A stretch of 48,865 nt of DNA, taken from positions 1-48,865 of the forward strand of contig CDMY01000573.1 of the NCBI GenBank assembly GCA_001179505.1, in the 5' to 3' direction. The notes beneath the pieces were generated by a model. That model had not been told where the DNA came from and did not search any database. It saw only the letters and a program-made list of their open reading frames with translations. Every line of letters starts with the position of its first letter. The stretch's first letter is position 1. Below are positions 35,533-48,231 of the stretch, piece after piece. Both the position numbers and the translations under genes were made by a program. The stretch is from Vitrella brassicaformis CCMP3155. Taxonomy: Eukaryota; Protista; Chromerida.

Positions 35533-37972
35533 ATGCCGCTCATCAAACTGAAGCCCTCATCCGCCGATACTCCAGACGCCATGAGTGCCGGATTTACCGC
35601 TGCGACCTCCCGCAACGCCGACGTTGCAGGCGGCGCACAGCCTGCTGTCAGCAGCAGCAACGCTACGGACGCATCAGAGGAGAAGATCAAGCTATCTAAT
35701 GGCTTCTGTGAGCCCAACAAGGTATCCATCGCCTGGGTCAACTACCGCGCCAAGATCATCAAGATCTCCCTCATCGTCGCCGCCCTCTGGCTGGCCGCAT
35801 ACGCATTCATGGAGGTCTTCAACGCTGTCTGGCAGAACGGGGGCAGTGGCACCACCACCACACACACACAAGGCGGCCAGGGCGGCGGCCCCTATCTGCA
35901 GGGGAAAGCGGGCAGAAAGAAGGTCAAATCGGTTGCTGCTCACGTCATGCTGCCCAGGATGATCAGGGCCAGCCACCAGGATGCCAACCGCACTCTGCCT
36001 GTCGATGCCATGATGTACGACAGTGAGGACTTTGAGGGCACGGCAGGCGTCGTCAAGAACTGGCTGGAGCGGTTTGCTGATCTCGACGTGCGGCTGCTGG
36101 ACTCACAGCTGGCACAGCAGACGCCCCCGGTGGTGTTCCCTCCCGCCTCATTGCTGGACCCGGAGACTCTGCTGGACTGGTATGAGCAGCGGGGGAGTGT
36201 GTTCATCTGGCTGATCAACGGCGACACCATGAACAAGTACGGGTCCTCCCATATCCTCTGCCACGAGACGGAGCGGCTCATCAGGGAGCTCAACACACAG
36301 ACCTTCGACTGGTCCAAGAGCCCCCAGGACCAGGGGCGCATCCGGCTGCACGCCAGCTGCTTGTCGTGCGACACGGCCTGCTTCCGCTCGGGGTCGAAGG
36401 GCACAATGGGCTTCCGGTTCCTGGCGGCCGTGCACGTCAATGGCTGGTATGACAGACAGACCGACAGACAGACAGACAGACGAACAGAGACACAGAGAGC
36501 AGGAATAAACACGGAAGGACTCTTTCTCTTGGTCCAGGTGCGATTGTCTAGACGAGGACGTGCTGTACTCGACCGCTCACGCCGTCCTGGTCAACGACGC
36601 CGCCAAAGGGCCGGTCATCGATGGGGTCGTGCCCACACTGGGCGTCCCAGTGGCTGTGTATCTGACCAGCAACCTATACATGTGGCAGAAGTGGCGGGAG
36701 GAGGCCGCCAAGCTGCCCGGCGACCCCCCCGATGTCTTTCTGCTGCCTGCTCCTCTGGCCGTCAAGAGGGAGAGCGTGTGGCGCCTGCAGGCACTCGCGA
36801 AGGTCACAATGACCGTCACATAGAAAGCATCAACACAAGGGAAGGTCCACCGCATAGTTTCCTTGTCTCAGGCAACCGATCTGGCCAATCCTGCCGACCG
36901 ACCCTTGACAGTCGGCTTTCACACGAGCTGCTGCAGCGAGAGCATCGGGTGCGGGAGAAAAGTCCTACACATAAATACCGTTTTTGTGGATTCTTCTTCT
37001 CTGCATTGCAGGTGTCCAGGGAAAGAGGATTCCCTCGGTTGCTGCTTCAAGCCTGGGTGCGAGAGCGTCCGGTCGTTCATCGACAAAGTCAAGACACATG
37101 TCAAGCGGCGATACACACCAGGTTGGCAAGGGAAAAGAGGACACACGGCACACAACGCAAAGGTCAGAGTGGTGTGTGGGTGGCTGATTGATTTGATGTC
37201 TGCAGATAAGGTGAGGGTGTTGGATTTGCCCAACGATGTGTGGAAGGACCGGGAGGAGAGATCCAAGGCGCTGCAGGAGGTCCGAGACACACCACAAATA
37301 AATCCACACAGACATCCATCTACACGTGTCTCTCCCTCCTTCTCCGTCTGTCTGTCTGTCTGTGTCAGAACGCGACAGCTTTGCTGACAAATGAGCTGTC
37401 TCGTTTTGACATCGGTGTGGTGTGGGCCCCCTCCAGCTCGCCCGACGCCACTCCCGTGTTGTCCAAGAAGGTCGACGAGACCACCCCCGACGAGCGGCGG
37501 CTCTTCACCTTCCCATCGTGGTTCGTCACACACCTCGCCATGGGCATTCCCACTATCGCACACCACGGGTGAGTGAGAGACGCAGAGAGTGGCGGACGTG
37601 CTTATGCAGTGTGTGTGGGGGTGTGGGGTGTTTCTGTAGGGTGGCCGGGGTGCATGATGTGACTCTGCGTTCAAAGATGAGGACGGTGGTGGACATGGAC
37701 GAGCAGGCCATCCGGCTGCTCGACAGGCTCATCCAGAGCCCAGCTTATCGTGCAGAGCTGACGGCAGAGGCAGTGGCACTCGCGCGCGAATACGACCCGG
37801 CCGCATACACATACCGGTCGGTACACACAGCTGAAGTGCGCATGCACGAAGAAGACCACATGTGTGTGTCATGTGTGTCAGGTGGCTGCCTGTGCTGAGA
37901 CGTCTGATCGACAAGACACTGGAGCTGAAGCGCAACATGGCTGCATCGGGGGGGCAGGGTGAGCAGCCTTGA
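35533..37972 (+). CDS. Type II membrane protein with a GT-B (GT4-like) glycosyltransferase C-terminal region
   Basis: Single TM (IIKISLIVAALWLAAYAF) and in-frame exons. The C-terminus HLAMGIPTIA...IRLLDRLIQSPAYRAELTAEAVALAREYDPAAYTYRW resembles the GT-B C-terminal helices. An alternative start lies at 35491. Confidence 0.6.
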
Positions 37973-38354
37973 TTGAGGCCGCGCAGTGGTTGGTGCTTCC
38001 CTTCCGCTAGGCAGTTAACTGACGGACACTCGTAGGCATTGATGCGTGGTATACACCGTCCCGCAGGTGCACAGGAGGCAGCAAAAACTTGACACGTGGA
38101 TGCAACTCATGCACTGCACGCCAGCATGCCATCCACAAACGCAGCAACCATACCGCACCAACACACCACACAAAAAGTCCTCCCGCTCCCGTGTTGTGTT
38201 GTGGCTGCCCATCGTGCAGTCCGCGCGCAGGGGTACTGCGCCGGAAGCACAGTAACAAGACACACCGGTCTGTCTTTAGGCAACAAATCCCCCACCCACC
38301 CCCCAAAGCACGTGCCATAACCAAACAAACAACATGGCCGACAGCCCAGCCCCC

Positions 38355-38426
38355 TCGCGCACGCAACACATCAGGCGGGCGGCTCCCTGCAGGATTCACC
38401 GCCCCCCGTCATTCGTCGCAGCACGA
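38355..38426 (-). promoter_or_regulatory. Type II SECIS element in the 3' UTR of the PUB gene
   Basis: Minus strand reads tcgtgctgcgac-ga-ATGAC-ggggggcggt-g-AA-tcct-gca-ggga-gccgcccgcc-TGAT-gt-gttgcgtgcgcga. It has helix I, the UGAN/NGAN quartet, a 10-bp helix II (9 paired), AA 11 nt from the quartet, and an apical mini-stem. Confidence 0.85.
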
Positions 38427-38587
38427 GTATGGAGGCCGTCCGTCGACCAGATGAGTAATGTGGCCCTTCCGTCGATTTGCCGCCGTGCGATTGACCGCGA
38501 CCGCCTGAGAAACCAAGCACCGCTGCATGTGAGAGCGCGAGTCATTGCGTGGTGTGTGTATGTCGTCCTACCAACGGAAGGTCCACT

Positions 38588-40448
38588 TTAGCGTCATCCG
38601 CCCCTAGGGGGAGGGGGCTTGGGCAAGTCCTGAACACACACGCACATATACACATGGCCACGAACGGGCAAAGCACACATGAGACATGTCGACACAGTGC
38701 CATCCATCTGCCAGTGTCCGTGCCTGTATGGTTTTGACCGCTCCAGCTCCCCCGCCCGGCCCTGGTTTCTTGCCACTCCCCCCACCCCCGCCACCTCCCC
38801 CGCCCGACGAGGAGCTGCCGCCGCCGAACAGCGTGTTGAAGAACTTGCTTATCCCCGACGAGCCAGAAGCGTTGCCGCTCTGCGGAGGGATGGAGGAGGG
38901 CTGCACACGGAGGGCACCGACATGGGGTGTTGTTGGTGTGTTGGGTGTGGCATGATGTGTTGTGTTGTGTTGTTGGTTACCGGCTGTTGGTATTGGGGTG
39001 CGTCATATCGGTTGGGATCGTTTTGGAAGTTGCTGAACCTGGCCCGCTGCTGCGCGCGAAGGGCACTCAACTCATCGTTGCTCTTCTGCAATGCACAGAG
39101 AGAGATGGAGGGCTTGCTGTCCCTGTGTCCCAGATCTGTCCCTCCCGCTCCCCCTATCTCACACACGCACCTTGATGGCCTCGGCAGTGTCGATCCGTTT
39201 CTTGAAGTCAAACGCCGTCTTGCCGCCCTTGCTGGGAGCACTACTGTCAGACTTGCTGAAGCCACCAAACACACGAACACAGGAGAGCACGTCTGCTGAG
39301 CTATACCCGTCATGTCCTGGTGTTGCCTGTCCCAGTCACCGACCCACCCCCACCCAGAGATGCTGTTGGAGCTCTCCGATCGCGGCCCGACGTTATCTGG
39401 TGGCGGCGCCAGCGTCCCAGAGGCCTTGGGGCTCATCGAGCCAGGGCTGGCCGGACCCTGCAGGCACATGCCAGACACACACAAAAGGGCGAATGGTCCG
39501 TCTGTGGTGTTGCCGGTCACACGTGTTGCCCAGCTCACTCACCTCAAACTGTTTGCGCTTCTCTGCCCGGATCTGCGCCATCTGCTCGTTGTGACTCTTC
39601 TGCAGAAAGACGGTGTGTGTGGTGGGAAAAGAAAGAGATGCATACGACGTGCCTGTGTGTACCATGTGTTGTGTGTTGTGTGTTGGTCATTGAGCCTTAC
39701 CAGCTCTGCCTGCGCCCGCAGTGTCTTCTGGGCAGGGACAATGTTCTGAAACTTGGGCCGCTCAACCGAAACCTGAACGAAGAACACGCCACACCACACA
39801 CACAACCGATGGATGAGGAGCCCTCACGCCAATGCCCGCCTGCCTTACCTGTGGCTGCTGCTGCGACTGCTGCTGTGGCTCATGGTTGAGGCTGACTAGG
39901 ATGCCCTCAAAAGTGTCGCAGAAGGGCTCCAGGGCAGACGCGGCCGCAGACATCGGGTACACGAACGTCTCGCCAACCTGTTCCATGCACACACAGTTGC
40001 TGAACAAACACACACGGCGGTGGGGGAGGCGTGTGTTTTTTTCGGACCTCGTTGAAGCCGCAATGCCTGATGACATCCTCAAACAGAATGCCCTCGGGCG
40101 CCCCGTCCAGAAACAGCTGTGTCAACGACAGAACACCCACGCACACACGCATCCCATCTCGCACCCTGCCGCCTGTTTCTGTCCATCCATCTCTCCTTCT
40201 GGCCTGCCTACTTTGGCCTTGATGGTGGCATTGGTCCGCTTGATAGTGCGATACTTGGCCTCTGAGGGGTTCGATACGATGCTGACGGACGGACAGAAAG
40301 ACAGTCAGAACCGAACAACATACGCCTTCAGCATCTTCTGTTGGTCGCCTTCTTACTTTCTGAGGAGCTTAAGAAGGAGTGCGTACGCCTCAGCCTTGAC
40401 GGCGTCCGGCAACTCCAAATGGGCGATGGTTTCCGTCAACTCCTCCAT
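38588..40448 (-). CDS. PUB-domain selenoprotein (about 330 aa, 11 exons) with a Gly-rich SelK-like tail ending PPPPRGG-U-R*
   Basis: PUB signature LLKLLRNIVSNPSEAKYRTIKRTN...HCGFNEVGETFVYP. All exons splice in frame. TGA at 38596-38594, CGC, then TAA at 38590-38588; SECIS about 170 nt downstream. Confidence 0.85.
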
Positions 40449-41689
40449 AGCCGACTGACCACGGCACTCACGTCTGAGTCAGCGAGAACCGGCGACAGAC
40501 GGACGATAACAACAACGGAAACAAACACGCCTCCCCTCCCCTCTCACCTTCCCTCCGAGCCCTTTCCCTTTGTCTCTCCGAGTGGATCGTCTTCGAGCTC
40601 GCAGACAAGCGGCGGAGTAGGGCGTGAAGCGCCCGCGCCAAGCGACAGCGAAAGGCATCACATCTTCTGACAGCCGCCGCCTCATGCTGACGACTCGCGC
40701 GAGAAATTGAAGCAGATCTGGGGCTTTGCAATTGTCTGTGAGGAGGCTGATATCATTCACACATGCGAGATGCGTTCTGCCATTGTGTTGTTGTGTGCCA
40801 GGTGTGCGTCAGCGAACGGCGGAGGCGGAGGAAGAAAACCTGCACACACACACGAAGTCTGTCAGCCATGCATTTCTCTTCTTCTCTCCATGTGTGTGGT
40901 GTTCACTGTTTAGGAGCGAGCCGTGGTGTCTTCGTTATTCATCGCTACCAGCAAGCCTGGTGTTGCTGTGTGGGTCACTGATGGGTGATGGTCGGCGGTG
41001 TGAGTGGAGGGACTCGGAGGCCTTTCAGCGCTCGGCGAGGATCTGTCTATCCCCTGACTGACTCGTGTACACAGAGTGGGAAGGACGGACGACGGCTGTC
41101 TGTGAGGGTGCGCACAGCTGACATTTCTAGCCACGGGTGGTCGTGAAGCCGGTGCATGGGGGGATGGATGGATGGATGGATGGACAGCTTCTTGTTGATA
41201 TGTGGGGGTGGAGACACTTCACGTTCATGTGTGTCATATTCAAGGATTCTCTTCACAAAACACCTTGACAAGCAGCAACCCTCTTAAAAGCAAAATCGGC
41301 CTGCCTGTCTTGCCTGTCTGCCTATTATCCACGCATCCGTCACATGCGACCATCATGAGCGGCCATCGCGAGTGGATGCGGTCCGCCACTCAGCTGAGCC
41401 ACGGCGATGTAGTGAAGGCCACGTGGGTGGTGGAGGACGTCTGCTGCCAACTGCCGGTCGGATGAAAGGGGCGGAGATGAATCAATGGGCATGGCGGTCG
41501 GCAGGGCAGTGTCGAATAAGCGGGGTGGGGCATGACGATAGGTGTGGCACATCGGCAGAAGAGCAGAAAAGGCCCACAGATATAAAATGTAGGCGGCGAT
41601 CTACACAAGGCAGAGGAGACATGAGATGTAGAAAGGTCATGAAAAGTCCTCTGGTCATACCTGAGTGTCGTATTGGCGCAGTGGCCGAA

Positions 41690-43180
41690 GGATCATTCCA
41701 GCATGCGGTCCTTCTCTGGCTTGGTCACACCCTTGAGCAGCCGGGCCAGACGCTGCGCCTTGTCCTGCATGCTGCTGTCGCTGTCGTGGCAGGCACCAGC
41801 AGCGCTCTTAAAAGCAACATCAGCCTGCCCGCCTATTCGAGCACACACGGCTCCCCCCTCGCTGAATCTGTGTCGGTCGGTCGGTCTCTCCCCCCCTCTC
41901 TGTACATCTCTTACTCTCCCACCGCTGCTCAATTAGAAAACACGCGATAGCACATGCATGGCACAGCTACCCCTTCCAGAAATCTCCCTCTACATGTGTG
42001 TGTTGGTGCCTGTCTTCTGTCTGTGTGTGTGCATAGTATGCGCATAGTGGGGTGGGGTGGGTGGGTGTGGCTGTGTATAGCTATGGAAGGCTGTGTGTGT
42101 TGCTGCCCCGGAGAACGAGGGGCGGCTGGCGGGCGCCAGGAGGACGAGGTCGAGTGGCAGCAGCAGCAGCAGCGGCAGCATAAGCAAAGGCCGCGGGTGC
42201 GGCACCTGAACACACCGACACACAGACACATACGCACACACAAGGTAACACACACACATGAATGGGTGTCTCTCTTACTTGGCAGCTCGTCGTTGTTTTC
42301 GTCATGTTGGCCGTCGACCTGGTGCGGCCGCGCCCCGCCCCTCCCGCCCTGGCGTCCTCGTCGTCATTGTAGTACCACTCGCCGTCATCCCCACCCTCGT
42401 CGGCCTCGTCGTCATCGGGCAGCGGGTTCTTCTGCTCTCACTTGCCCATGATGGCCTGCAGGTCGTCAGCCGAGAGGTCCCACCCGGGCGGGACGTGGCC
42501 GCCGTCGTCACTGACCCCGAAGAGTGCGGGCAGCAAGCCCAGACACTCCTCAGGGTCGGTGATGAGGTAGGACTCGGCCTGGACCTCCTCCGCACGAGGA
42601 GGGGCTGGAAGGCCAGGGAGAGAGAGAGGAGGGCCACCACGACCGTGAGAGAGCGGCAAGGCATCCTTGCTCGCGAGGGGTCGAGAGTGTGCGGGTAGCG
42701 CGCGCGGGAGTTTGCGGGTGCGGAGGCGTGCGGGGGAAGGGAACCTGAAATAACACCACACGACATCGCAACGCATATATGCAAAGAGAGGGCAGGATGG
42801 ATGTGTCTGACCTCATCCACGTCATCGAGGTAGGTGGCCTTGTTGACCTCGCTCCGCTCGACCGTCGCCCTTGCCCTCTCCAACCATTCCTCCCTATGGT
42901 CCTCCTCGGCAGCAGCAGCGCCCGTGTCGTCGCGGTCACCTCGATCAGAGCCCCGCAGCGCCTCCTCCTCCTCCTCCTGCTGATCCAGCTCGTGGATCTC
43001 GGCCGCTTGTGGTGTGTGCCAACCAGCCATCCATCCATCCATCCATCCACCAACCCACTGACTGACCAACACGTACTGTACCTGCGCCCGGTTTGCCCAT
43101 GAGTACCACCATCGTATCTTGAGTGTCTTCCTGTGTTGCTCGATGATGTCCAGCTCTGACGGACCAATGGACAACACATG
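41690..43180 (-). pseudogene. Family-B repeated gene, copy 1, multi-exon with in-frame stops; unknown function
   Basis: Exons AAEIHELDQ...KATYLDDVDE and EEVQAESYLITDPEECLGLLPALF...MGK*EQKNPLPDDDE recur at 43726-44520; in-frame TGA at about 42438 and about 41693. Confidence 0.45.
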
Positions 43181-43424
43181 CCGTCAGAAATGAGGATGGT
43201 TTGTCACTGGCGAAATCCCAACGACACTCCTCACCGGAAGAATGTCGAGATCGCTGAGAAAGAAAAGCGTTGTGCGATCTTGGAAGAATCCGTCAGATAT
43301 AAGATGTAGGCAGCAATCGAAAGTGTGTCTCCGTATCTAATTGGGGGAGACACACATGATCGTATCCACCCTTCCATCACTTTGGCTCGTGTATCATCAG
43401 ACGCTTACGTCGTACCCGAGCTGT

Positions 43425-43725
43425 NNNNNNNNNNNNNNNNNNNNNNNNNNNNNNNNNNNNNNNNNNNNNNNNNNNNNNNNNNNNNNNNNNNNNNNNNNNN
43501 NNNNNNNNNNNNNNNNNNNNNNNNNNNNNNNNNNNNNNNNNNNNNNNNNNNNNNNNNNNNNNNNNNNNNNNNNNNNNNNNNNNNNNNNNNNNNNNNNNNN
43601 NNNNNNNNNNNNNNNNNNNNNNNNNNNNNNNNNNNNNNNNNNNNNNNNNNNNNNNNNNNNNNNNNNNNNNNNNNNNNNNNNNNNNNNNNNNNNNNNNNNN
43701 NNNNNNNNNNNNNNNNNNNNNNNNA
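43425..43725. other. Assembly gap (N run)
   Basis: About 300 consecutive N. Confidence 1.
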
Positions 43726-44900
43726 AGGTAACACACACACATGAATGGGTGTCTCTCTTACTTGGCAGCTCGTCGTTGTTTTCGTCATGTTGGCCGTCGA
43801 CCTGGTGCGGCCGCGCCCCGCCCCTCCCGCCCTGGCGTCCTCGTCGTCATTGTAGTACCACTCGCCGTCATCCCCACCCTCGTCGGCCTCGTCGTCATCG
43901 GGCAGCGGGTTCTTCTGCTCTCACTTGCCCATGATGGCCTGCAGGTCGTCAGCCGAGAGGTCCCACCCGGGCGGGACGTGGCCGCTGTCATCACTGACAC
44001 CGAAGAGTGCGGGCAGCAAGCCCAGACACTCCTCAGGGTCGGTGATGAGGTAGGACTCGGCCTGGACCTCCTCCGCACGAGGAGGGGCTGGAAGGCCAGG
44101 GAGAGAGAGAGGAGGGCCACCACGACCGTGAGAGAGCGGCAAGGCATCCTTGCTCGCGAGGGGTCGAGAGTGTGCGGGTAGCGCGCGCGGGAGTTTGCGG
44201 GTGCGGAGGCGTGCGGGGGAAGGGAACCTGAAATAACACCACACGACATCGCAACGCATATATGCAAAGAGAGGGCAGGATGTATGTGTGTGACCTCAAG
44301 GGTTACGGGTGGCGCTCATCCACTTCATCGAGGTAGGTGGCCTTGTTGACCTCGCTCCGCTCGACCGTCGCCCTTGCCCTCTCCAACCATTCCTCCCTAT
44401 CGTCCTCCTCGGCAGCAGCAGCGTCCGTGTCGTCGCGGTCACCTCGATCAGAGCCCCGCAGCGCCTCCTCCCCATCCTGATCCAGCTCGTGGATCTCGGC
44501 CGCAGTGCCGAAGCGCTCAGGGATGAGAAGGGGCGCGCCGCTCTCCATCTCGATGTGCCATCTGCCGTCCTGCTGATAAAGGTTGACCCGACCGTCAACG
44601 ATACGAGGCTGACGGTCGGTCGCCCTGATGAGCTGGCAGATGGGCACCACGACGACATTGCACCAAATGATTGTGCACCACTTGAACCTGAGAAGCACAG
44701 GTAGCGAAGACGCCAAGCAATACGACACAAATGTATGCCACCATGGCTAGGATACGCCCACCCATTGGGCAGAGCTTGCATATGATGAAGATTATGTCGG
44801 TGATTACCCACGGCATGTTCCAGTGCTTGTTGATGCGGCACTGCCCATTGGTGAGGTCCAGGTAGCGGAGCACGCGCCGGATTTCGCTGTGCTGACACAC
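43726..44900 (-). pseudogene. Family-B copy 2; 43726-44270 is near-identical to 42243-42790
   Basis: Direct sequence identity, with additional upstream exons at about 44520-44900. Confidence 0.5.
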
Positions 44901-45339: not shown

Positions 45340-46047
45340 CCCAACGCCCTCAATGGGGCCCACAGGTGTAGAGCGTAGGCAGCGATCTGCACGAAGCAGG
45401 AGAGACATGACATACAAGGGGACCGTAAGGCATTCGGCAGTTATACTTGGGTGCCGCACTCACTGGCACAGTGGGTCGACGAGCAAGCATCCGTCAAATA
45501 TAAAATGCAGACAGCGATGCCTGAACCCAACCGAAGCGTTGTATGTCTCGCATTGCTGCTCGTCGTGAAGGCCTGCTCACCTGACGCTCCTGCTCTCGGT
45601 CGGCCTCTCTGTACATCTCTCACTCTCCCACCGCTGCTCATTTAGAGAACGCGCAATAGCACATGCATGGCACAGCTACCCCTCCCAGAAATCTCCCTCT
45701 ACGTGTGTTGGTCCTGTCCTGTCTTGTCCTCTGTCTGTGTGTGCGTGGGGTGGGGTGGGTGCGGGTGTGGCTCTGTATGGCTACGATCGGTTGAGAGGCT
45801 GGCGGGCGCTAGCAGCAGCACGAGCACGGGGTGCGGGTGGTGCGGCGCCTGAACACACATACAGACAGACAGACAGACAGACACACACACAAGGAAACAC
45901 ACACACATATATATCTCCCTCTATTCTGCATGTCCCTGCATGTGCACATGAATGGGTGTCTCTCTTACTTGGCAGCTCGTCGTTGCTTTGGTCGTCTTGG
46001 CCGTCGACCTGGTGCGGCCGCGCCCCGCCCCTCCCGCCCTGAAAGGC
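45340..46047 (-). repeat. Diverged third copy of the family-B 3' segment (matches about 41560-42350)
   Basis: Shares a ~100-bp block (cctctctgtacatctc...gaaatctccctctac, 45603-45702 versus 41893-41993) and the PHQVDGQ...DELP exon. Confidence 0.6.
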
Positions 46048-46049
46048 CT

Positions 46050-46349
46050 NNNNNNNNNNNNNNNNNNNNNNNNNNNNNNNNNNNNNNNNNNNNNNNNNNN
46101 NNNNNNNNNNNNNNNNNNNNNNNNNNNNNNNNNNNNNNNNNNNNNNNNNNNNNNNNNNNNNNNNNNNNNNNNNNNNNNNNNNNNNNNNNNNNNNNNNNNN
46201 NNNNNNNNNNNNNNNNNNNNNNNNNNNNNNNNNNNNNNNNNNNNNNNNNNNNNNNNNNNNNNNNNNNNNNNNNNNNNNNNNNNNNNNNNNNNNNNNNNNN
46301 NNNNNNNNNNNNNNNNNNNNNNNNNNNNNNNNNNNNNNNNNNNNNNNNN
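46050..46349. other. Assembly gap (N run)
   Basis: 300 consecutive N. Confidence 1.
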
Positions 46350-46784
46350 GTGTCCTGCACACAAGACAAAGAGGGAGGAGCGGATGAGATGAAGGCACGC
46401 TCATATTGCAGGGCGGTGGCTGCGTCCCGCGCCTACCGACGAAGAAGCGGCGAATGCGCTCCTTCTGATCCTTGCTCACGCCACTTGAGAAGATCGGGCC
46501 CAGCTGCTGTGCTATCTCCTCCTTGGAGGCGCCGCTGTTGAGGATGGTGCCGATTTCCTCCCATTTGTCGGCCTCCTTCTGCCCCTCCTTCCTACCCTTG
46601 TCGGCTGTAGACAGAACACGACAGAAAGCATCCATGCATCTTGGCAACTACCACCTGGCGGTGTTTCTGTCGTGTGCTCACCCTCTCTCCCCTTTTTGCC
46701 CGTCTTGCTCTTCTGCCGTTTGGATGTGTCCTTCTCGTCCGCAAACGGCCTGCCCGCGGGCCGGCGTCCTCCTCGCCCCGCCAT
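46350..46784 (-). CDS. Family-A copy a, exons 1-2, truncated by the gap
   Basis: MAGRGGRRPAG...KSKTGKKGRE followed by ADKGRKEGQKEADKWEEIG...; same introns as the other copies. Confidence 0.55.
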
Positions 46785-46974
46785 GCGTCAGGGGTCGATA
46801 AGCAAGGATCCGTCAAATATAAAATGCAGGCAACGATTCATCACGTGACGCCTGAGAGAAGACGAGACGTGACCAAGGGAGATATACCAACAGTTCTCTC
46901 AACGTATGTGTGTCTCTCTGCTTCCTGGCCTACCTTGAGCTAAAAGTATTTGCGCCAGCCGCTCTCCAGGTCCT

Positions 46975-48231
46975 TCACGGCACCGGTTGCGGCGTGTGGC
47001 TGTTGGCGGGGTTGGGAGGGCGGGGATGTCTGTTAAGGCGCGTGTCGATCTTGGCCTTCGCGCCTTTTACCCTCCCTCCGTCCCACACCCTCCGCCATGC
47101 CCTCTCCTCCCGCTGGCGCAGCTCGTCCTGGCTGGGGATGCCGCCCTTGCCCGTGGCTACCCAGGGCTGGCGGCGCTCCCCTTTGGGAGGGGTGGGGGCG
47201 GAGTCGAGGGACTTAAGTTGCGCGGCCTTTGGTGGCGGCGCGAGGGGCAGGGTGTGGAGGGTGGTGGTGGCACTGGCCTGGTGTTTGGGCATCCACAGGT
47301 CATCGATGTGCTCAATGGCCTGGATGCAATGCAGACGAAACCCCGACGCTCTACCCTCCTTGTTTGTATGTGCTTGGGCGTGTGCATGTGGAGTGAGGCA
47401 AGCCTGCACCCGCTCACCGGCTCGGTGTGGTAAATGCCACGCTTCAGCCGTCGCACCAGGTCTGCAGCCTCTTTAGTCTGCAATACAAGTCGAACAAATC
47501 AGACAAACCAACCACACACCCAACAATGTCGTGTGTGTGTGTGTGTGTGTGTTGGGGAGGGGGGCGGACCTGCGTCTCCGGCGACACCTGCAGCCGGCGC
47601 AGGCTGCTCTCGAGCTCCGCCAGCTTAGTGGCCACACACACACCGCCGCCCCCCACCCCCACAGCCCCGGTCGAGCCGCCCGCCGCCGGAGCACCGCCCC
47701 CCTTCTGCAGCCGCAGCTGGGCCGCAGCAGCCCGCATCAGGCGGGCCTCCTCAGCGGCCTCACGCTGCTCGCGGAGGGGCGACACGTCCTCATGGCCTGC
47801 ACACAAGACAAAGAGGGAGGAGCGGATGAGATGAAGGCACGCTCATATTGCAGGGCGGTGGCTGCGTCCCGCGCCTACCGACCAAGGAGCGGCGAATGTG
47901 GTCCTTCTGCTCCTTGCTCACGCCAGCGTCGATGATCAGGCGCAGCTGGTCCCCCTTGGCCTTCATGCTGGCCCCGCTGCTCAGGATGGTGATGATCTCC
48001 TCAGAGATGTCGGCGTCCTTCTGCCCCTCCAACCTAACCTTATTGGCTGCAGACAGAACACGACAGAAAGCATCCATGCATCTTGGCAACCACCACCTGG
48101 CCGTCCTCTATCGTGTGCTCACCGTCCCGCCCCTTCTTGCCCGTCTTGCTCTTTTTGTACTTGCTCATCTCCTTGTGGTGCGGGCCGTCTGCAAACGGCC
48201 TGCCGGGCCGCCAGCCGTCGCGCCCCGACAT
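46975..48231 (-). CDS. Family-A copy b, apparently complete five-exon gene; unknown function
   Basis: MSGRDGWRPG...; ANKVRLEGQKDAD...; DVSPLREQREAAEEARL...; TKEAADLVRRLKRGIYHTEP; AIEHIDDL...QPVP*. Confidence 0.6.

What the first reader, a model, noticed from the sequence alone, without database searches (positions are those of the whole stretch)
38355..38629. Hidden selenocysteine: GG-UGA-R-UAA terminus plus a canonical type II SECIS in the PUB gene
Seen in sequence: the last exon (38629-38588, minus) reads GAC TTG CCC AAG CCC CCT CCC CCT AGG GGC GGA TGA CGC TAA. About 170 nt downstream is ATGAC-N11-AA-ministem-N10-TGAT, with a 12-bp helix I (one bulge) and a 9/10-paired helix II. Established: eukaryotic SECIS elements have this AUGA...AA...GA geometry, and SelK/SelS carry Sec in a C-terminal GGU motif one or two residues before the stop. 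Inference: the UGA is decoded as Sec. Gene callers, including the supplied ORF track, stop at 38594 and would miss it.
Basis: partly seen in the sequence, partly recalled or inferred. Interest (0 to 1): 0.92.

Follow-up and report, generated by a model that had tools for sequence, protein, structure and literature searches.

The report
Hidden selenocysteine in a PUB protein
A Vitrella brassicaformis gene for a p97-binding (PUB-domain) protein almost certainly ends in a selenocysteine that the public annotation reads as a stop. It belongs to a conserved protist family that is truncated in the same way throughout the databases.

Summary
On the minus strand the reading frame runs ...PPPPRGG-TGA(38596-38594)-CGC-TAA(38590-38588). 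A SECIS-shaped hairpin lies at 38357-38426 (Rfam SECIS_1 21.5 bits, below the gathering score; fold z -4.8).

RNA contigs confirm 12 exons and the splice into the Sec exon, which uses a GC-AG intron. They place the hairpin in the 3'UTR. The Sec exon is therefore penultimate, and the UGA-to-AUGA spacing in the mRNA is 114 nt.

The gene is annotated in Vitrella brassicaformis CCMP3155 as a PUB domain-containing protein ending at ...RGG. An exhaustive HMMER search found 44 cluster representatives with the same tail, all ending at this point.

DNA from 10 orthologues, including Chromera and Perkinsus, shows TGA at this site every time. A short conserved extension follows (G, R or GPRxC), then TAA or TAG. 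One relative has Cys there (...PRCCR-TAA). Two orthologues carry canonical SECIS patterns.

I read it as a soluble PUB-domain selenoprotein with a SelK/SelS-style Gly-rich tail and no membrane anchor. A "PUB" family is already listed among algal selenoproteins (Jiang 2020), so this is a new member of a known, barely described kind.

The parts
38594..38596 (-). In-frame UGA read as selenocysteine (residue 332 of 333)
   Evidence: Sequence. Present unchanged in the RNA contigs (no other letters). TGA at the aligned site in 10 of 10 orthologues, and Cys in P0042.
38588..38593 (-). CGC (Arg) plus the true stop TAA
   Evidence: Chromera velia has the same U-R-TAA ending.
38572..38629 (-). Exon 11, 58 nt, penultimate. 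It carries DLPKPPPPRGG-U-R-stop plus 16 nt of 3'UTR.
   Evidence: RNA contig joints. Canonical boundaries computed.
38630..38723 (-). GC-AG intron (94 nt) before the Sec exon
   Evidence: Joint 38628/38723 with 4 ambiguous letters. Only a shift of +1 gives a GC..AG splice.
38505..38571 (-). GT-AG intron (67 nt) inside the 3'UTR, between the stop and the SECIS
   Evidence: Joint seen in contigs of X1 and X7; boundaries.
38357..38426 (-). Type II SECIS element. AUGA at 38412-38409, AA 12 nt later, ministem, UGAU. The stem extends to about 38347-38438.
   Evidence: Rfam SECIS_1 21.5 bits over the full model. Fold -55.7 kcal/mol, z -4.8. 0 of 1000 shuffles reach its pattern score.
38025..38504 (-). 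Last exon, all 3'UTR. The 3' end lies somewhere around 37997-38065.
   Evidence: Contigs X1 record 1, X2 records 4 and 5, X7 record 8.
38724..40448 (-). Coding exons 1-10, starting at ATG 40448. Exons: 40448-40357, 40281-40212, 40116-40048, 39977-39849, 39772-39701, 39599-39543, 39457-39354, 39255-39171, 39085-38981, 38900-38724.
   Evidence: Spliced RNA contigs. Translation gives 331 aa up to the UGA. Identical to residues 33-363 of annotated protein P0001.
39942..40391 (-). PUB domain (residues 20-89 of the product), split over exons 1-4
   Evidence: Pfam PF09409 at 46.7-47 bits against a cutoff of 34.3. AlphaFold pLDDT above 90 for residues 1-110. Best Foldseek matches are PNGase PUB domains 2hpl/2hpj, TM 0.76-0.78, rmsd 2.2 A.
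38597..38900 (-). Gly/Ser/Pro-rich basic tail: FFNTLFGGGSSSS, a poly-G run, KKPGPGGG, VKTIQDLPKPPPPRGG. It is interrupted by the GC-AG intron.
   Evidence: Translation. Family consensus GWFxxxFGGxSSS...GPRMKTIxDLPKPVxRGG. Predicted disordered.

Best explanation
This is a genuine selenoprotein gene of Vitrella brassicaformis.

The 12-exon mRNA encodes a soluble 333-residue protein. It has an N-terminal PUB domain, the module that docks onto the C-terminal tail of the AAA ATPase p97/Cdc48. Next come two long helices and a conserved KSAFDF...LRAxQKxKY segment. The protein ends in a flexible Gly/Ser/Pro-rich basic tail, ...KTIQDLPKPPPPRGG-Sec-Arg.

The UGA at 38596-38594 is recoded to selenocysteine by a type II SECIS located in the last exon, 114 nt downstream in the spliced mRNA. 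Translation then ends one codon later at UAA.

Shown here: the sequence, the splicing, the 3'UTR content, the PUB fold, family-wide conservation of UGA plus a short translated extension, and a Cys-containing relative.

Inferred: the protein is recruited to p97 through its PUB domain and presents a reactive selenol on a disordered tether. SelK and SelS do this from the ER membrane. I therefore expect it to act in p97-dependent protein quality control. Ribosomes that fail to insert Sec would release a product ending in -GG. The UGA lies only 22 nt before the last exon junction, so by the mammalian 50-55 nt rule it should not trigger nonsense-mediated decay.
For: Sequence and RNA
- The sequence is as described.
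- Spliced RNA contigs from four runs give the exon chain and no base differences. They link the Sec exon to the SECIS-bearing exon.
- SECIS: Rfam full-length alignment at 21.5 bits, fold z -4.8, 0 of 1000 shuffles reach its score.

Family evidence
- Annotated protein P0001 stops exactly at the UGA.
- An exhaustive HMMER search gave 127 hits. 44 have the same tail, and all end at ...R/A-G(G)(G).
- Orthologue DNA has TGA first in 10 of 10 cases. The second stop, where it can be read (10 cases counting Vitrella), is always TAA or TAG. The extension is G (5 cases), R (Vitrella and Chromera) or GPRxC (3 cases, which differ by synonymous changes).
- The Cys form P0042 ends ...PRCCR-TAA.
- Canonical SECIS patterns lie 47 nt and 100 nt after the UGA codon in L001 and in Perkinsus L002. 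For each, 0 of 1000 shuffles reach the observed score.

Protein features
- PUB domain by Pfam and by fold.
- No hydrophobic segment: the maximum Kyte-Doolittle 19-residue mean is 0.99.

Literature
- Jiang et al. 2020 (PMC7539508) list 'PUB domain-containing protein' among algal selenoprotein families.
Against: - The SECIS scores below Rfam's gathering threshold (21.5 against 35 bits) and dropped out when a 24-kb stretch was scanned.
- Rfam does not score the orthologue SECIS candidates.
- I found no convincing SECIS in Chromera, L011 or L013.
- Sec machinery (tRNA-Sec, EFSec, SBP2, SPS2, PSTK, SecS) was not checked in this genome. The only pointers are unchecked notes of other candidate selenoproteins.
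- The RNA contigs are unstranded, and a convergent gene ends at 37971, so part of the 3'UTR coverage could be the neighbour's.
- No protein-level evidence exists.
- The p97 role is inference from domain identity alone.
Confidence: 0.88

Rival explanations
1. The UGA is an ordinary stop. The protein naturally ends ...PRGG, and the downstream hairpin and second stop are coincidences.
For: - All database gene models end there.
- The SECIS is below the Rfam gathering score.
- Shorter PUB proteins of about 180-200 aa from ciliates and a dinoflagellate also end in GG or GGG. One of them (L008) has TGA directly followed by TAA with no SECIS found.
Against: - TGA is first in 11 of 11 long-type genes, while the second in-frame stop is TAA or TAG in 10 of 10.
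- Residues after the UGA are conserved: G or R, and GPRxC with synonymous codon differences, in proteins under 50% identical overall.
- A relative has Cys at the aligned position and the same terminal Arg.
- SECIS-pattern hairpins occur in three independent orthologues, none matched by 1000 shuffles each.
Confidence: 0.05
2. The UGA is read through without selenium. A near-cognate tRNA inserts Trp, Arg or Cys, giving a short C-terminal extension, and the hairpin merely stimulates read-through.
For: The post-UGA extension is conserved, which by itself shows translation past the UGA, not Sec. Selenium incorporation was not tested.
Against: - The hairpin has the specific SECIS signature: an AUGA/UGAU quartet, AA 12 nt after the core, and a ministem. 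It aligns over the whole Rfam SECIS model.
- The only substitution seen at the site is Cys, the usual partner of Sec.
- The GG-U context at position -2 or -3 is that of SelK/SelS (PMC10650576).
- The same genome is noted to hold many other candidate selenoproteins (unchecked).
Confidence: 0.04
3. The Sec form is a minor product. Most ribosomes terminate at the UGA, and the functional protein is the -GG form, with Sec insertion only a regulated variant.
For: A UGA this near the natural stop is typically decoded inefficiently in SelS/SelK-type mRNAs. Truncated SelK ending in -GG is a known product that is cleared by KLHDC2 in mammals (PMC9098119).
Against: Family-wide purifying selection on the UGA, on the residues after it and on the SECIS implies that the Sec form is what is selected. 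The ratio of the two forms cannot be judged from sequence.
Confidence: 0.03

Closest known systems
'PUB' (PUB domain-containing protein) selenoprotein family listed for algae in Jiang et al. 2020, BMC Genomics 21:699 (PMC7539508)
   Same: It is a PUB-domain protein that contains Sec. The paper describes the Sec form as one of the least widely distributed algal selenoproteins.
   Different: The held text of the paper gives only the name. It gives no Sec position, architecture, SECIS or function, and Vitrella and Chromera are not mentioned.
SELENOK/SELENOS family (ER-membrane selenoproteins of the p97-dependent ERAD machinery)
   Same: - A disordered tail rich in Gly, Pro and basic residues.
- Sec at the second or third position from the C-terminus, preceded by GG.
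- A functional link to p97/VCP.
- Failed recoding would leave a -GG end.
(Family definition from PMC10650576; degron from PMC9098119.)
   Different: - No N-terminal transmembrane helix.
- No Pfam SelK_SelG hit in any of 30 members.
- No SelK-type protein among 127 HMMER hits.
- About 330 aa rather than about 95 or 190 aa.
- The p97 link would come through a PUB domain, which binds the p97 C-terminal tail, rather than SelS's VIM motif, which binds the p97 N domain.
PUB-domain p97 adaptors (PNGase, UBXD1/UBXN6, HOIP/RNF31)
   Same: Same fold. The best structural matches are PNGase PUB (2hpl, 2hpj, 2ccq), then UBXD1 and HOIP. The NPxExK(Y/F)R motif is conserved across the family.
   Different: None of these carries a Sec tail. 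This family has no catalytic, UBX or RBR domain. Some members instead insert UBA, UIM, RanBP2 zinc-finger or glutaredoxin modules in the linker.
Orthologues: Chromera velia Cvel_15491 (A0A0G4F7A6), Perkinsus chesapeaki KAF4655476.1, Rhytidocystis pertsovi and dinoflagellate transcripts
   Same: Same full-length architecture. Each product is truncated at the same point. Chromera has the identical UGA-Arg-TAA ending.
   Different: 25-33% identity to the Vitrella protein. Most non-chromerid members have U-G-stop or U-GPRxC-stop. I could not find a clear SECIS in the Chromera 3'UTR.

Membership tests
Eukaryotic selenoprotein gene | In-frame UGA within a conserved reading frame, with conservation continuing past it | tested here: met
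   UGA at 38596-38594. The extension (G, R or GPRxC) is conserved in 10 orthologues through synonymous changes.
Eukaryotic selenoprotein gene | SECIS element in the 3'UTR of the same mRNA | tested here: met
   Hairpin at 38357-38426 lies inside the last exon, which RNA contigs join to the Sec exon. Strandedness of the coverage is inferred, not measured.
Eukaryotic selenoprotein gene | Homologues with Cys (or Sec) aligned to the UGA | tested here: met
   P0042/P0132 end ...PRCCR-TAA, against ...PRGG-U-R-TAA here.
Eukaryotic selenoprotein gene | Genome encodes tRNA-Sec, EFSec, SBP2, SPS2, PSTK and SecS | not tested
   No tRNA in this window. Only unchecked notes of other candidate selenoproteins exist.
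Eukaryotic selenoprotein gene | Selenium incorporated into the protein | not testable with these tools
   Needs 75Se labelling or mass spectrometry.
SECIS element (Rfam RF00031 SECIS_1) | AUGA...GA non-Watson-Crick quartet between helix I and helix II, with unpaired AA 11-12 nt after the core | tested here: met
   AUGA-C-N11-AA...UGAU. Helix I is 13 bp with a bulge. Helix II is 9 bp with one G.G mismatch. A 4-bp ministem makes it type II.
SECIS element (Rfam RF00031 SECIS_1) | Score at or above the curated gathering threshold (35 bits) | tested here: not met
   21.5 bits, E 0.24 for 1 kb against 4227 families. No hit at gathering level.
SELENOK/SELENOS family | Single transmembrane helix in the N-terminal region | tested here: not met
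   Maximum 19-residue Kyte-Doolittle mean is 0.99, and it falls inside the PUB domain. AlphaFold shows a globular PUB domain plus soluble helices.
SELENOK/SELENOS family | Gly-rich segment with high Gly, Pro and positive charge | tested here: met
   GGGSSSS, a poly-G run, then SGKKPGPGGG...KPPPPRGG. Conserved family-wide.
SELENOK/SELENOS family | Sec at the second or third position from the C-terminus | tested here: met
   Sec is penultimate (U-R-stop). It is U-G-stop in most orthologues.
SELENOK/SELENOS family | Sequence-profile membership (Pfam PF10961 SelK_SelG) | tested here: not met
   No hit at E up to 10 for the tail, or at E up to 1 for 30 family members. The Atlas feature search of the tail returns PUB clusters, not SelK.
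PUB domain (Pfam PF09409) | Profile score above the gathering threshold, and a PUB fold | tested here: met
   46.7-47 bits against 34.3. 30 of 30 family members hit. Foldseek TM 0.76-0.78 to PNGase PUB.
PUB domain (Pfam PF09409) | Binds the C-terminal tail of p97/Cdc48 | not testable with these tools
   Inferred from fold and motif conservation only.
Algal 'PUB' selenoprotein family (Jiang et al. 2020) | PUB-domain protein with Sec | tested here: met
   against the listing in PMC7539508.
Algal 'PUB' selenoprotein family (Jiang et al. 2020) | Same Sec position and architecture as the published members | not testable with these tools
   The published sequences are only in an external web database. 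The paper text and the held supplement give no details.

The most novel reading that the evidence does not exclude
The Gly-rich GG-Sec tail may be an autonomous functional module of the p97/Cdc48 system that evolution has attached to different anchors. In SelK and SelS the anchor is a membrane helix. In this family it is a soluble PUB domain that grips the p97 C-terminus directly.

If so, this widespread but essentially undescribed protist family would be a natural, membrane-free model for finding out what the SelK/SelS selenol actually does at p97. Its shared motif (R/K-M/I-K/G-T/R-I-x-D/H-L...GG-U) would indicate common descent of the tails.
Probability: 0.35. Interest if true: 0.7.

Novelty: new member of a known kind. 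Interest (0 to 1): 0.55.

Why it matters
- It corrects the public annotation. The Vitrella, Chromera and Perkinsus entries, and dozens of transcriptome models, are all cut at the Sec codon.
- It shows that the family spans at least chromerids, an apicomplexan, perkinsids and dinoflagellates.
- The architecture is a 'Rosetta stone'. A dedicated p97-binding domain is fused to a SelK/SelS-style selenocysteine tail. This supports the view that such tails work at p97, and it offers a soluble protein in which to test that chemistry.
- The gene also has an intron between the Sec codon and the SECIS. That matters for gene finders, which assume the SECIS follows in the same exon, and for thinking about nonsense-mediated decay of selenoprotein mRNAs in alveolates.

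Tried and rejected
- Protein word-index searches with the full protein and with a 25-sequence alignment of the N-terminal parts were swamped by low-complexity words. They returned only 1 and 3 proteins, so I could not get a named taxonomic census or find members in Emiliania, Aureococcus or Symbiodinium.
- Rfam at gathering level finds nothing in the window. A 24-kb scan in E-value mode lost even the candidate SECIS, so it is useless as a control.
- Rfam SECIS_1 did not score the L001, Perkinsus or Chromera 3' regions.
Searches should be ignored.
- MAFFT misaligned the three SECIS candidates at the 3' GA, so I built no covariance model.
- A SelK relationship was sought with Pfam, with HMMER over 1.84 billion representatives and with the Atlas. 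None supports homology. The resemblance to human SelK's RRMGRINHL...GGUGR is from memory and at motif level only.
- The Gobler 2011 and 2013 Aureococcus papers, probably the origin of the 'PUB' family name, are not held.
- No notes on tRNA-Sec or selenophosphate synthetase exist for this genome.
Full report
**1. The observation**

On the minus strand the window reads ...ttcag|GAC TTG CCC AAG CCC CCT CCC CCT AGG GGC GGA TGA CGC TAA. The G of GAC is at 38629, TGA at 38596-38594 and TAA at 38590-38588.

Further downstream lies ATGA (38412-38409), then C, 11 nt, AA, a short ministem and TGAT. Complementary arms flank this core.

- RNAfold closes the whole 96-nt stretch into one hairpin of -55.7 kcal/mol. 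Shuffles average -39.8, giving z -4.8, and 0 of 200 fold as well.
- Rfam's SECIS_1 model aligns over its full length (positions 1-64) at 21.5 bits. The E-value is 0.24 for 1 kb, both strands, against all 4227 families. That is below the curated 35 bits, so nothing appears at gathering level.
- A simple pattern-plus-helix scanner scores the element 16.0. None of 1000 dinucleotide shuffles of the 500-nt 3' region reach that, and fewer than 1% give any hit.

**2. Gene structure from RNA**

Logan contigs from four public runs were laid on 37800-41000. They give a spliced transcript on the minus strand. One 1626-nt contig (X7, record 8) spans all of it.

After resolving the ambiguous letters at each joint, there are 12 exons, ten GT-AG introns and one GC-AG intron. 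The GC-AG intron (38630-38723) is the one just before the Sec exon.

- The Sec exon (38629-38572, 58 nt) is therefore penultimate, and the SECIS sits in the last exon.
- In the mRNA the UGA-to-AUGA spacing is 114 nt, against 181 nt in the genome.
- The UGA lies 22 nt before the last exon junction.
- No base differences from the genome were seen, so the TGA is not an assembly error or an edited site.

A convergent plus-strand gene ends with TGA at 37969-37971, so the two 3'UTRs may overlap, and the contigs are unstranded. Two points argue that the 38025-38505 coverage belongs to this gene. In runs X1 and X2 the neighbour's last coding exon has zero depth while 38025-38505 is covered. In X1 and X7 that stretch is contiguous with the Sec exon across the minus-strand splice. 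The SECIS therefore belongs to this gene's 3'UTR, which is about 500 nt long.

**3. The protein**

Translation from ATG 40448 gives 331 residues up to the UGA, then Sec-Arg-stop.

A protein search identified the locus as Vitrella brassicaformis CCMP3155. The product is annotated 'PUB domain-containing protein' (P0001, 363 aa), and its model ends ...PPPPRGG, exactly at the UGA.

Its 32 extra N-terminal residues come from two upstream exons that the RNA contigs do not support. The contigs run unspliced to 40548-40559 with an in-frame stop 10 codons before ATG 40448. Many orthologues also start at the equivalent Met.

- Pfam PUB scores 46.7-47 bits against a cutoff of 34.3.
- AlphaFold with a 30-sequence alignment gives pLDDT above 90 for residues 1-110.
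- Foldseek's best solved matches are the PNGase PUB domains, including the p97 complex 2hpl (TM 0.76-0.78, rmsd 2.0-2.2 A). UBXD1 and HOIP follow.
- After the PUB domain come two long helices and a disordered Gly/Ser/Pro/basic tail.
- There is no transmembrane segment. The maximum 19-residue hydropathy is 0.99.

**4. The family**

An exhaustive HMMER search of 1.84 billion cluster representatives gave 127 hits at E up to 1e-3. About two dozen align over the full length.

44 representatives carry the tail motif (K/R)(T/G)xxD(L/I/M)P... In every one of the 43 that reach the end of that motif, the predicted product stops right after ...(R/A)G, GG or GGG; the 44th, a 158-aa fragment, breaks off a little earlier at ...KPVQ.

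The family consensus is:
- a PUB domain
- a variable linker, with UBA, UIM, RanBP2 zinc-finger or glutaredoxin inserts in some members
- KSAFDF...SLQxLRAxQKxKY...DPxA...AYxxPxS
- GWFxxxFGGxSSS and a Gly-rich run
- GPRMKTIxDLPKPVxRGG

Named members are Chromera velia Cvel_15491, Perkinsus chesapeaki KAF4655476.1, a dinoflagellate and the apicomplexan Rhytidocystis pertsovi.

**5. What follows the 'stop' in orthologues**

I fetched the DNA of ten long-type orthologues. The endings were read.

| Ending after TGA | Loci |
|---|---|
| GGT then TAA or TAG | L001, L003, L006, L011, L014 |
| CGT then TAA | Chromera (L009/L010); Vitrella has CGC then TAA |
| Gly-Pro-Arg-x-Cys then stop | L007, L012, L013 |
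| GGT then a probable intron | Perkinsus (L002) |

The first in-frame stop is TGA in 10 of 10. The three GPRxC genes differ at synonymous positions (GGT/GGA, CCA/CCG, CGG/CGA), although the proteins fall in different 50%-identity clusters. L006 keeps the remnant CGG GGG TGC TAG after an early TAG.

Counting Vitrella, TGA is first in 11 of 11. The second stop, where it can be read, is TAA or TAG in 10 of 10. One relative (P0042, two runs) has ...PRCCR-TAA. That is a Cys at the position of Sec, with the same terminal Arg as in the chromerids.

Together these points show that the codons after the UGA are translated and under selection, and that the site is a Sec/Cys position.

**6. SECIS in orthologues**

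The canonical pattern (AUGA, 10-13 nt, AA, then GA, with both helices) is present in two orthologues:
- 47 nt after the UGA codon in L001
- 100 nt after it in Perkinsus L002

For each, none of 1000 shuffles reach the observed score.

Rfam's metazoan-trained model does not score them. L003, L007, L012 and L014 have (A/G)UGA...GA hairpins 70-150 nt downstream with non-canonical spacing. I found nothing convincing in Chromera, L011 or L013. This part is supportive but incomplete and needs SECISearch3.

**7. Mechanism**

Shown: UGA plus SECIS in one mRNA, conservation across the family, and a PUB fold.

Inferred: SECIS-directed Sec insertion gives a 333-aa soluble protein. The PUB domain docks onto the p97/Cdc48 C-terminal tail, as in PNGase, UBXD1 and HOIP. 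The Sec sits at the end of a flexible basic Gly/Pro tether.

This mirrors SelK and SelS. That family is defined by an N-terminal membrane helix, a Gly/Pro/basic-rich segment, and Sec at position -2 or -3, and its members work with p97 in ERAD (PMC10650576). Failed recoding would leave a -GG end. In mammals that is the KLHDC2 C-degron of truncated SelK (PMC9098119). Whether alveolates use such a degron is unknown.

**8. Comparison and novelty**

The gene meets two of the three defining features of the SelK/SelS family (the Gly-rich segment and the Sec position). It fails the third (the transmembrane helix) and fails the Pfam profile test. It works like SelK/SelS but should not be filed as a member.

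Jiang et al. 2020 list 'PUB: PUB domain-containing protein' among 42 algal selenoprotein families. They name it among the least widely distributed Sec forms and do not claim it as new. No description of its Sec position, tail or function is in the held text. No held paper mentions Vitrella together with selenoproteins.

I therefore rate this a new member of a known but barely described kind. The added points are:
- the family-wide truncated annotation
- the SelK/S-like tail on a p97-binding domain
- the GPRxC extension subgroup
- the intron between the Sec codon and the SECIS

**9. Caveats**

- Sec machinery in the genome was not checked. Only unchecked earlier notes list SelT, SelS, SelK, SelO, GPx, deiodinase-like and MGMT candidates.
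- There is no protein evidence.
- RNA coverage is unstranded.
- SECIS support from Rfam is sub-threshold.

**Verdict:** Confidence is about 0.88 that the UGA encodes Sec. Interest is 0.55.

Noticed in passing
window 40449-40850 (minus) and 40609-41000 (plus): The annotated protein P0001 has 32 extra N-terminal residues from two upstream minus-strand exons. The RNA contigs instead run unspliced to 40548-40559, with an in-frame stop before ATG 40448. They also show a plus-strand GT-AG intron (40738-40801) overlapping the supposed first exon. The annotated 5' end is probably wrong.
   Followed up: partly
window 37422-37971 (plus): A convergent plus-strand gene (...DEQAIRLLDRLIQSPAYRAELTAEAVALAREYDPAAYTYR / WLPVLRRLIDKTLELKRNMAASGGQGEQP) has its last exon at about 37882-37971 and stops at TGA 37969-37971. 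Its 3'UTR probably overlaps the selenoprotein's 3'UTR tail to tail.
   Followed up: partly
L008 (P0094), and P0048, P0054, P0088, P0100, P0103, P0121: A shorter PUB family (about 180-200 aa; ciliates Pseudomicrothorax and Furgasonia, dinoflagellate Togula) has a related tail (...FGAxxxTxKDIGVDLCAQKGG) and also ends in GG, GGG or GGGG. In L008 the ending is GGA TGA TAA. It could be a second set of C-terminal Sec proteins or a natural -GG end. In ciliates UGA may be the only stop, so this stays open.
   Followed up: partly
L007, L012, L013 (and the remnant in L006): A subgroup of the family extends past Sec as U-G-P-R-x-C-stop. That puts a Cys five residues after Sec, a possible selenenylsulfide partner.
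   Followed up: no
A1 members P0007, P0023, P0027 (UBA); P0025, P0029 (RanBP2 zinc finger); P0036 (glutaredoxin); two members with UIM: Family members insert ubiquitin-binding or redox modules in the linker between the PUB domain and the Sec tail. This fits a role in ubiquitin/p97 pathways.
   Followed up: no
L002 3275-3300 (Perkinsus chesapeaki): After TGA GGT the genomic frame runs on without a stop for more than 20 codons. The letters G|GTACTAAG suggest an intron starting right after the Sec-Gly codons, comparable to the 3'UTR intron in Vitrella.
   Followed up: no
window 43001-44000 and 46001-47000: Two 1-kb bins have much lower G+C (0.39 and 0.42) than the window's usual 0.55-0.68.
   Followed up: no
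window 37870-37937 (minus): Weak Rfam match to the lncRNA region ZNRD1-AS1_1 (27.4 bits, E 0.066, gathering score 50). It lies over the neighbour gene's last intron/exon boundary and is most likely chance.
   Followed up: no
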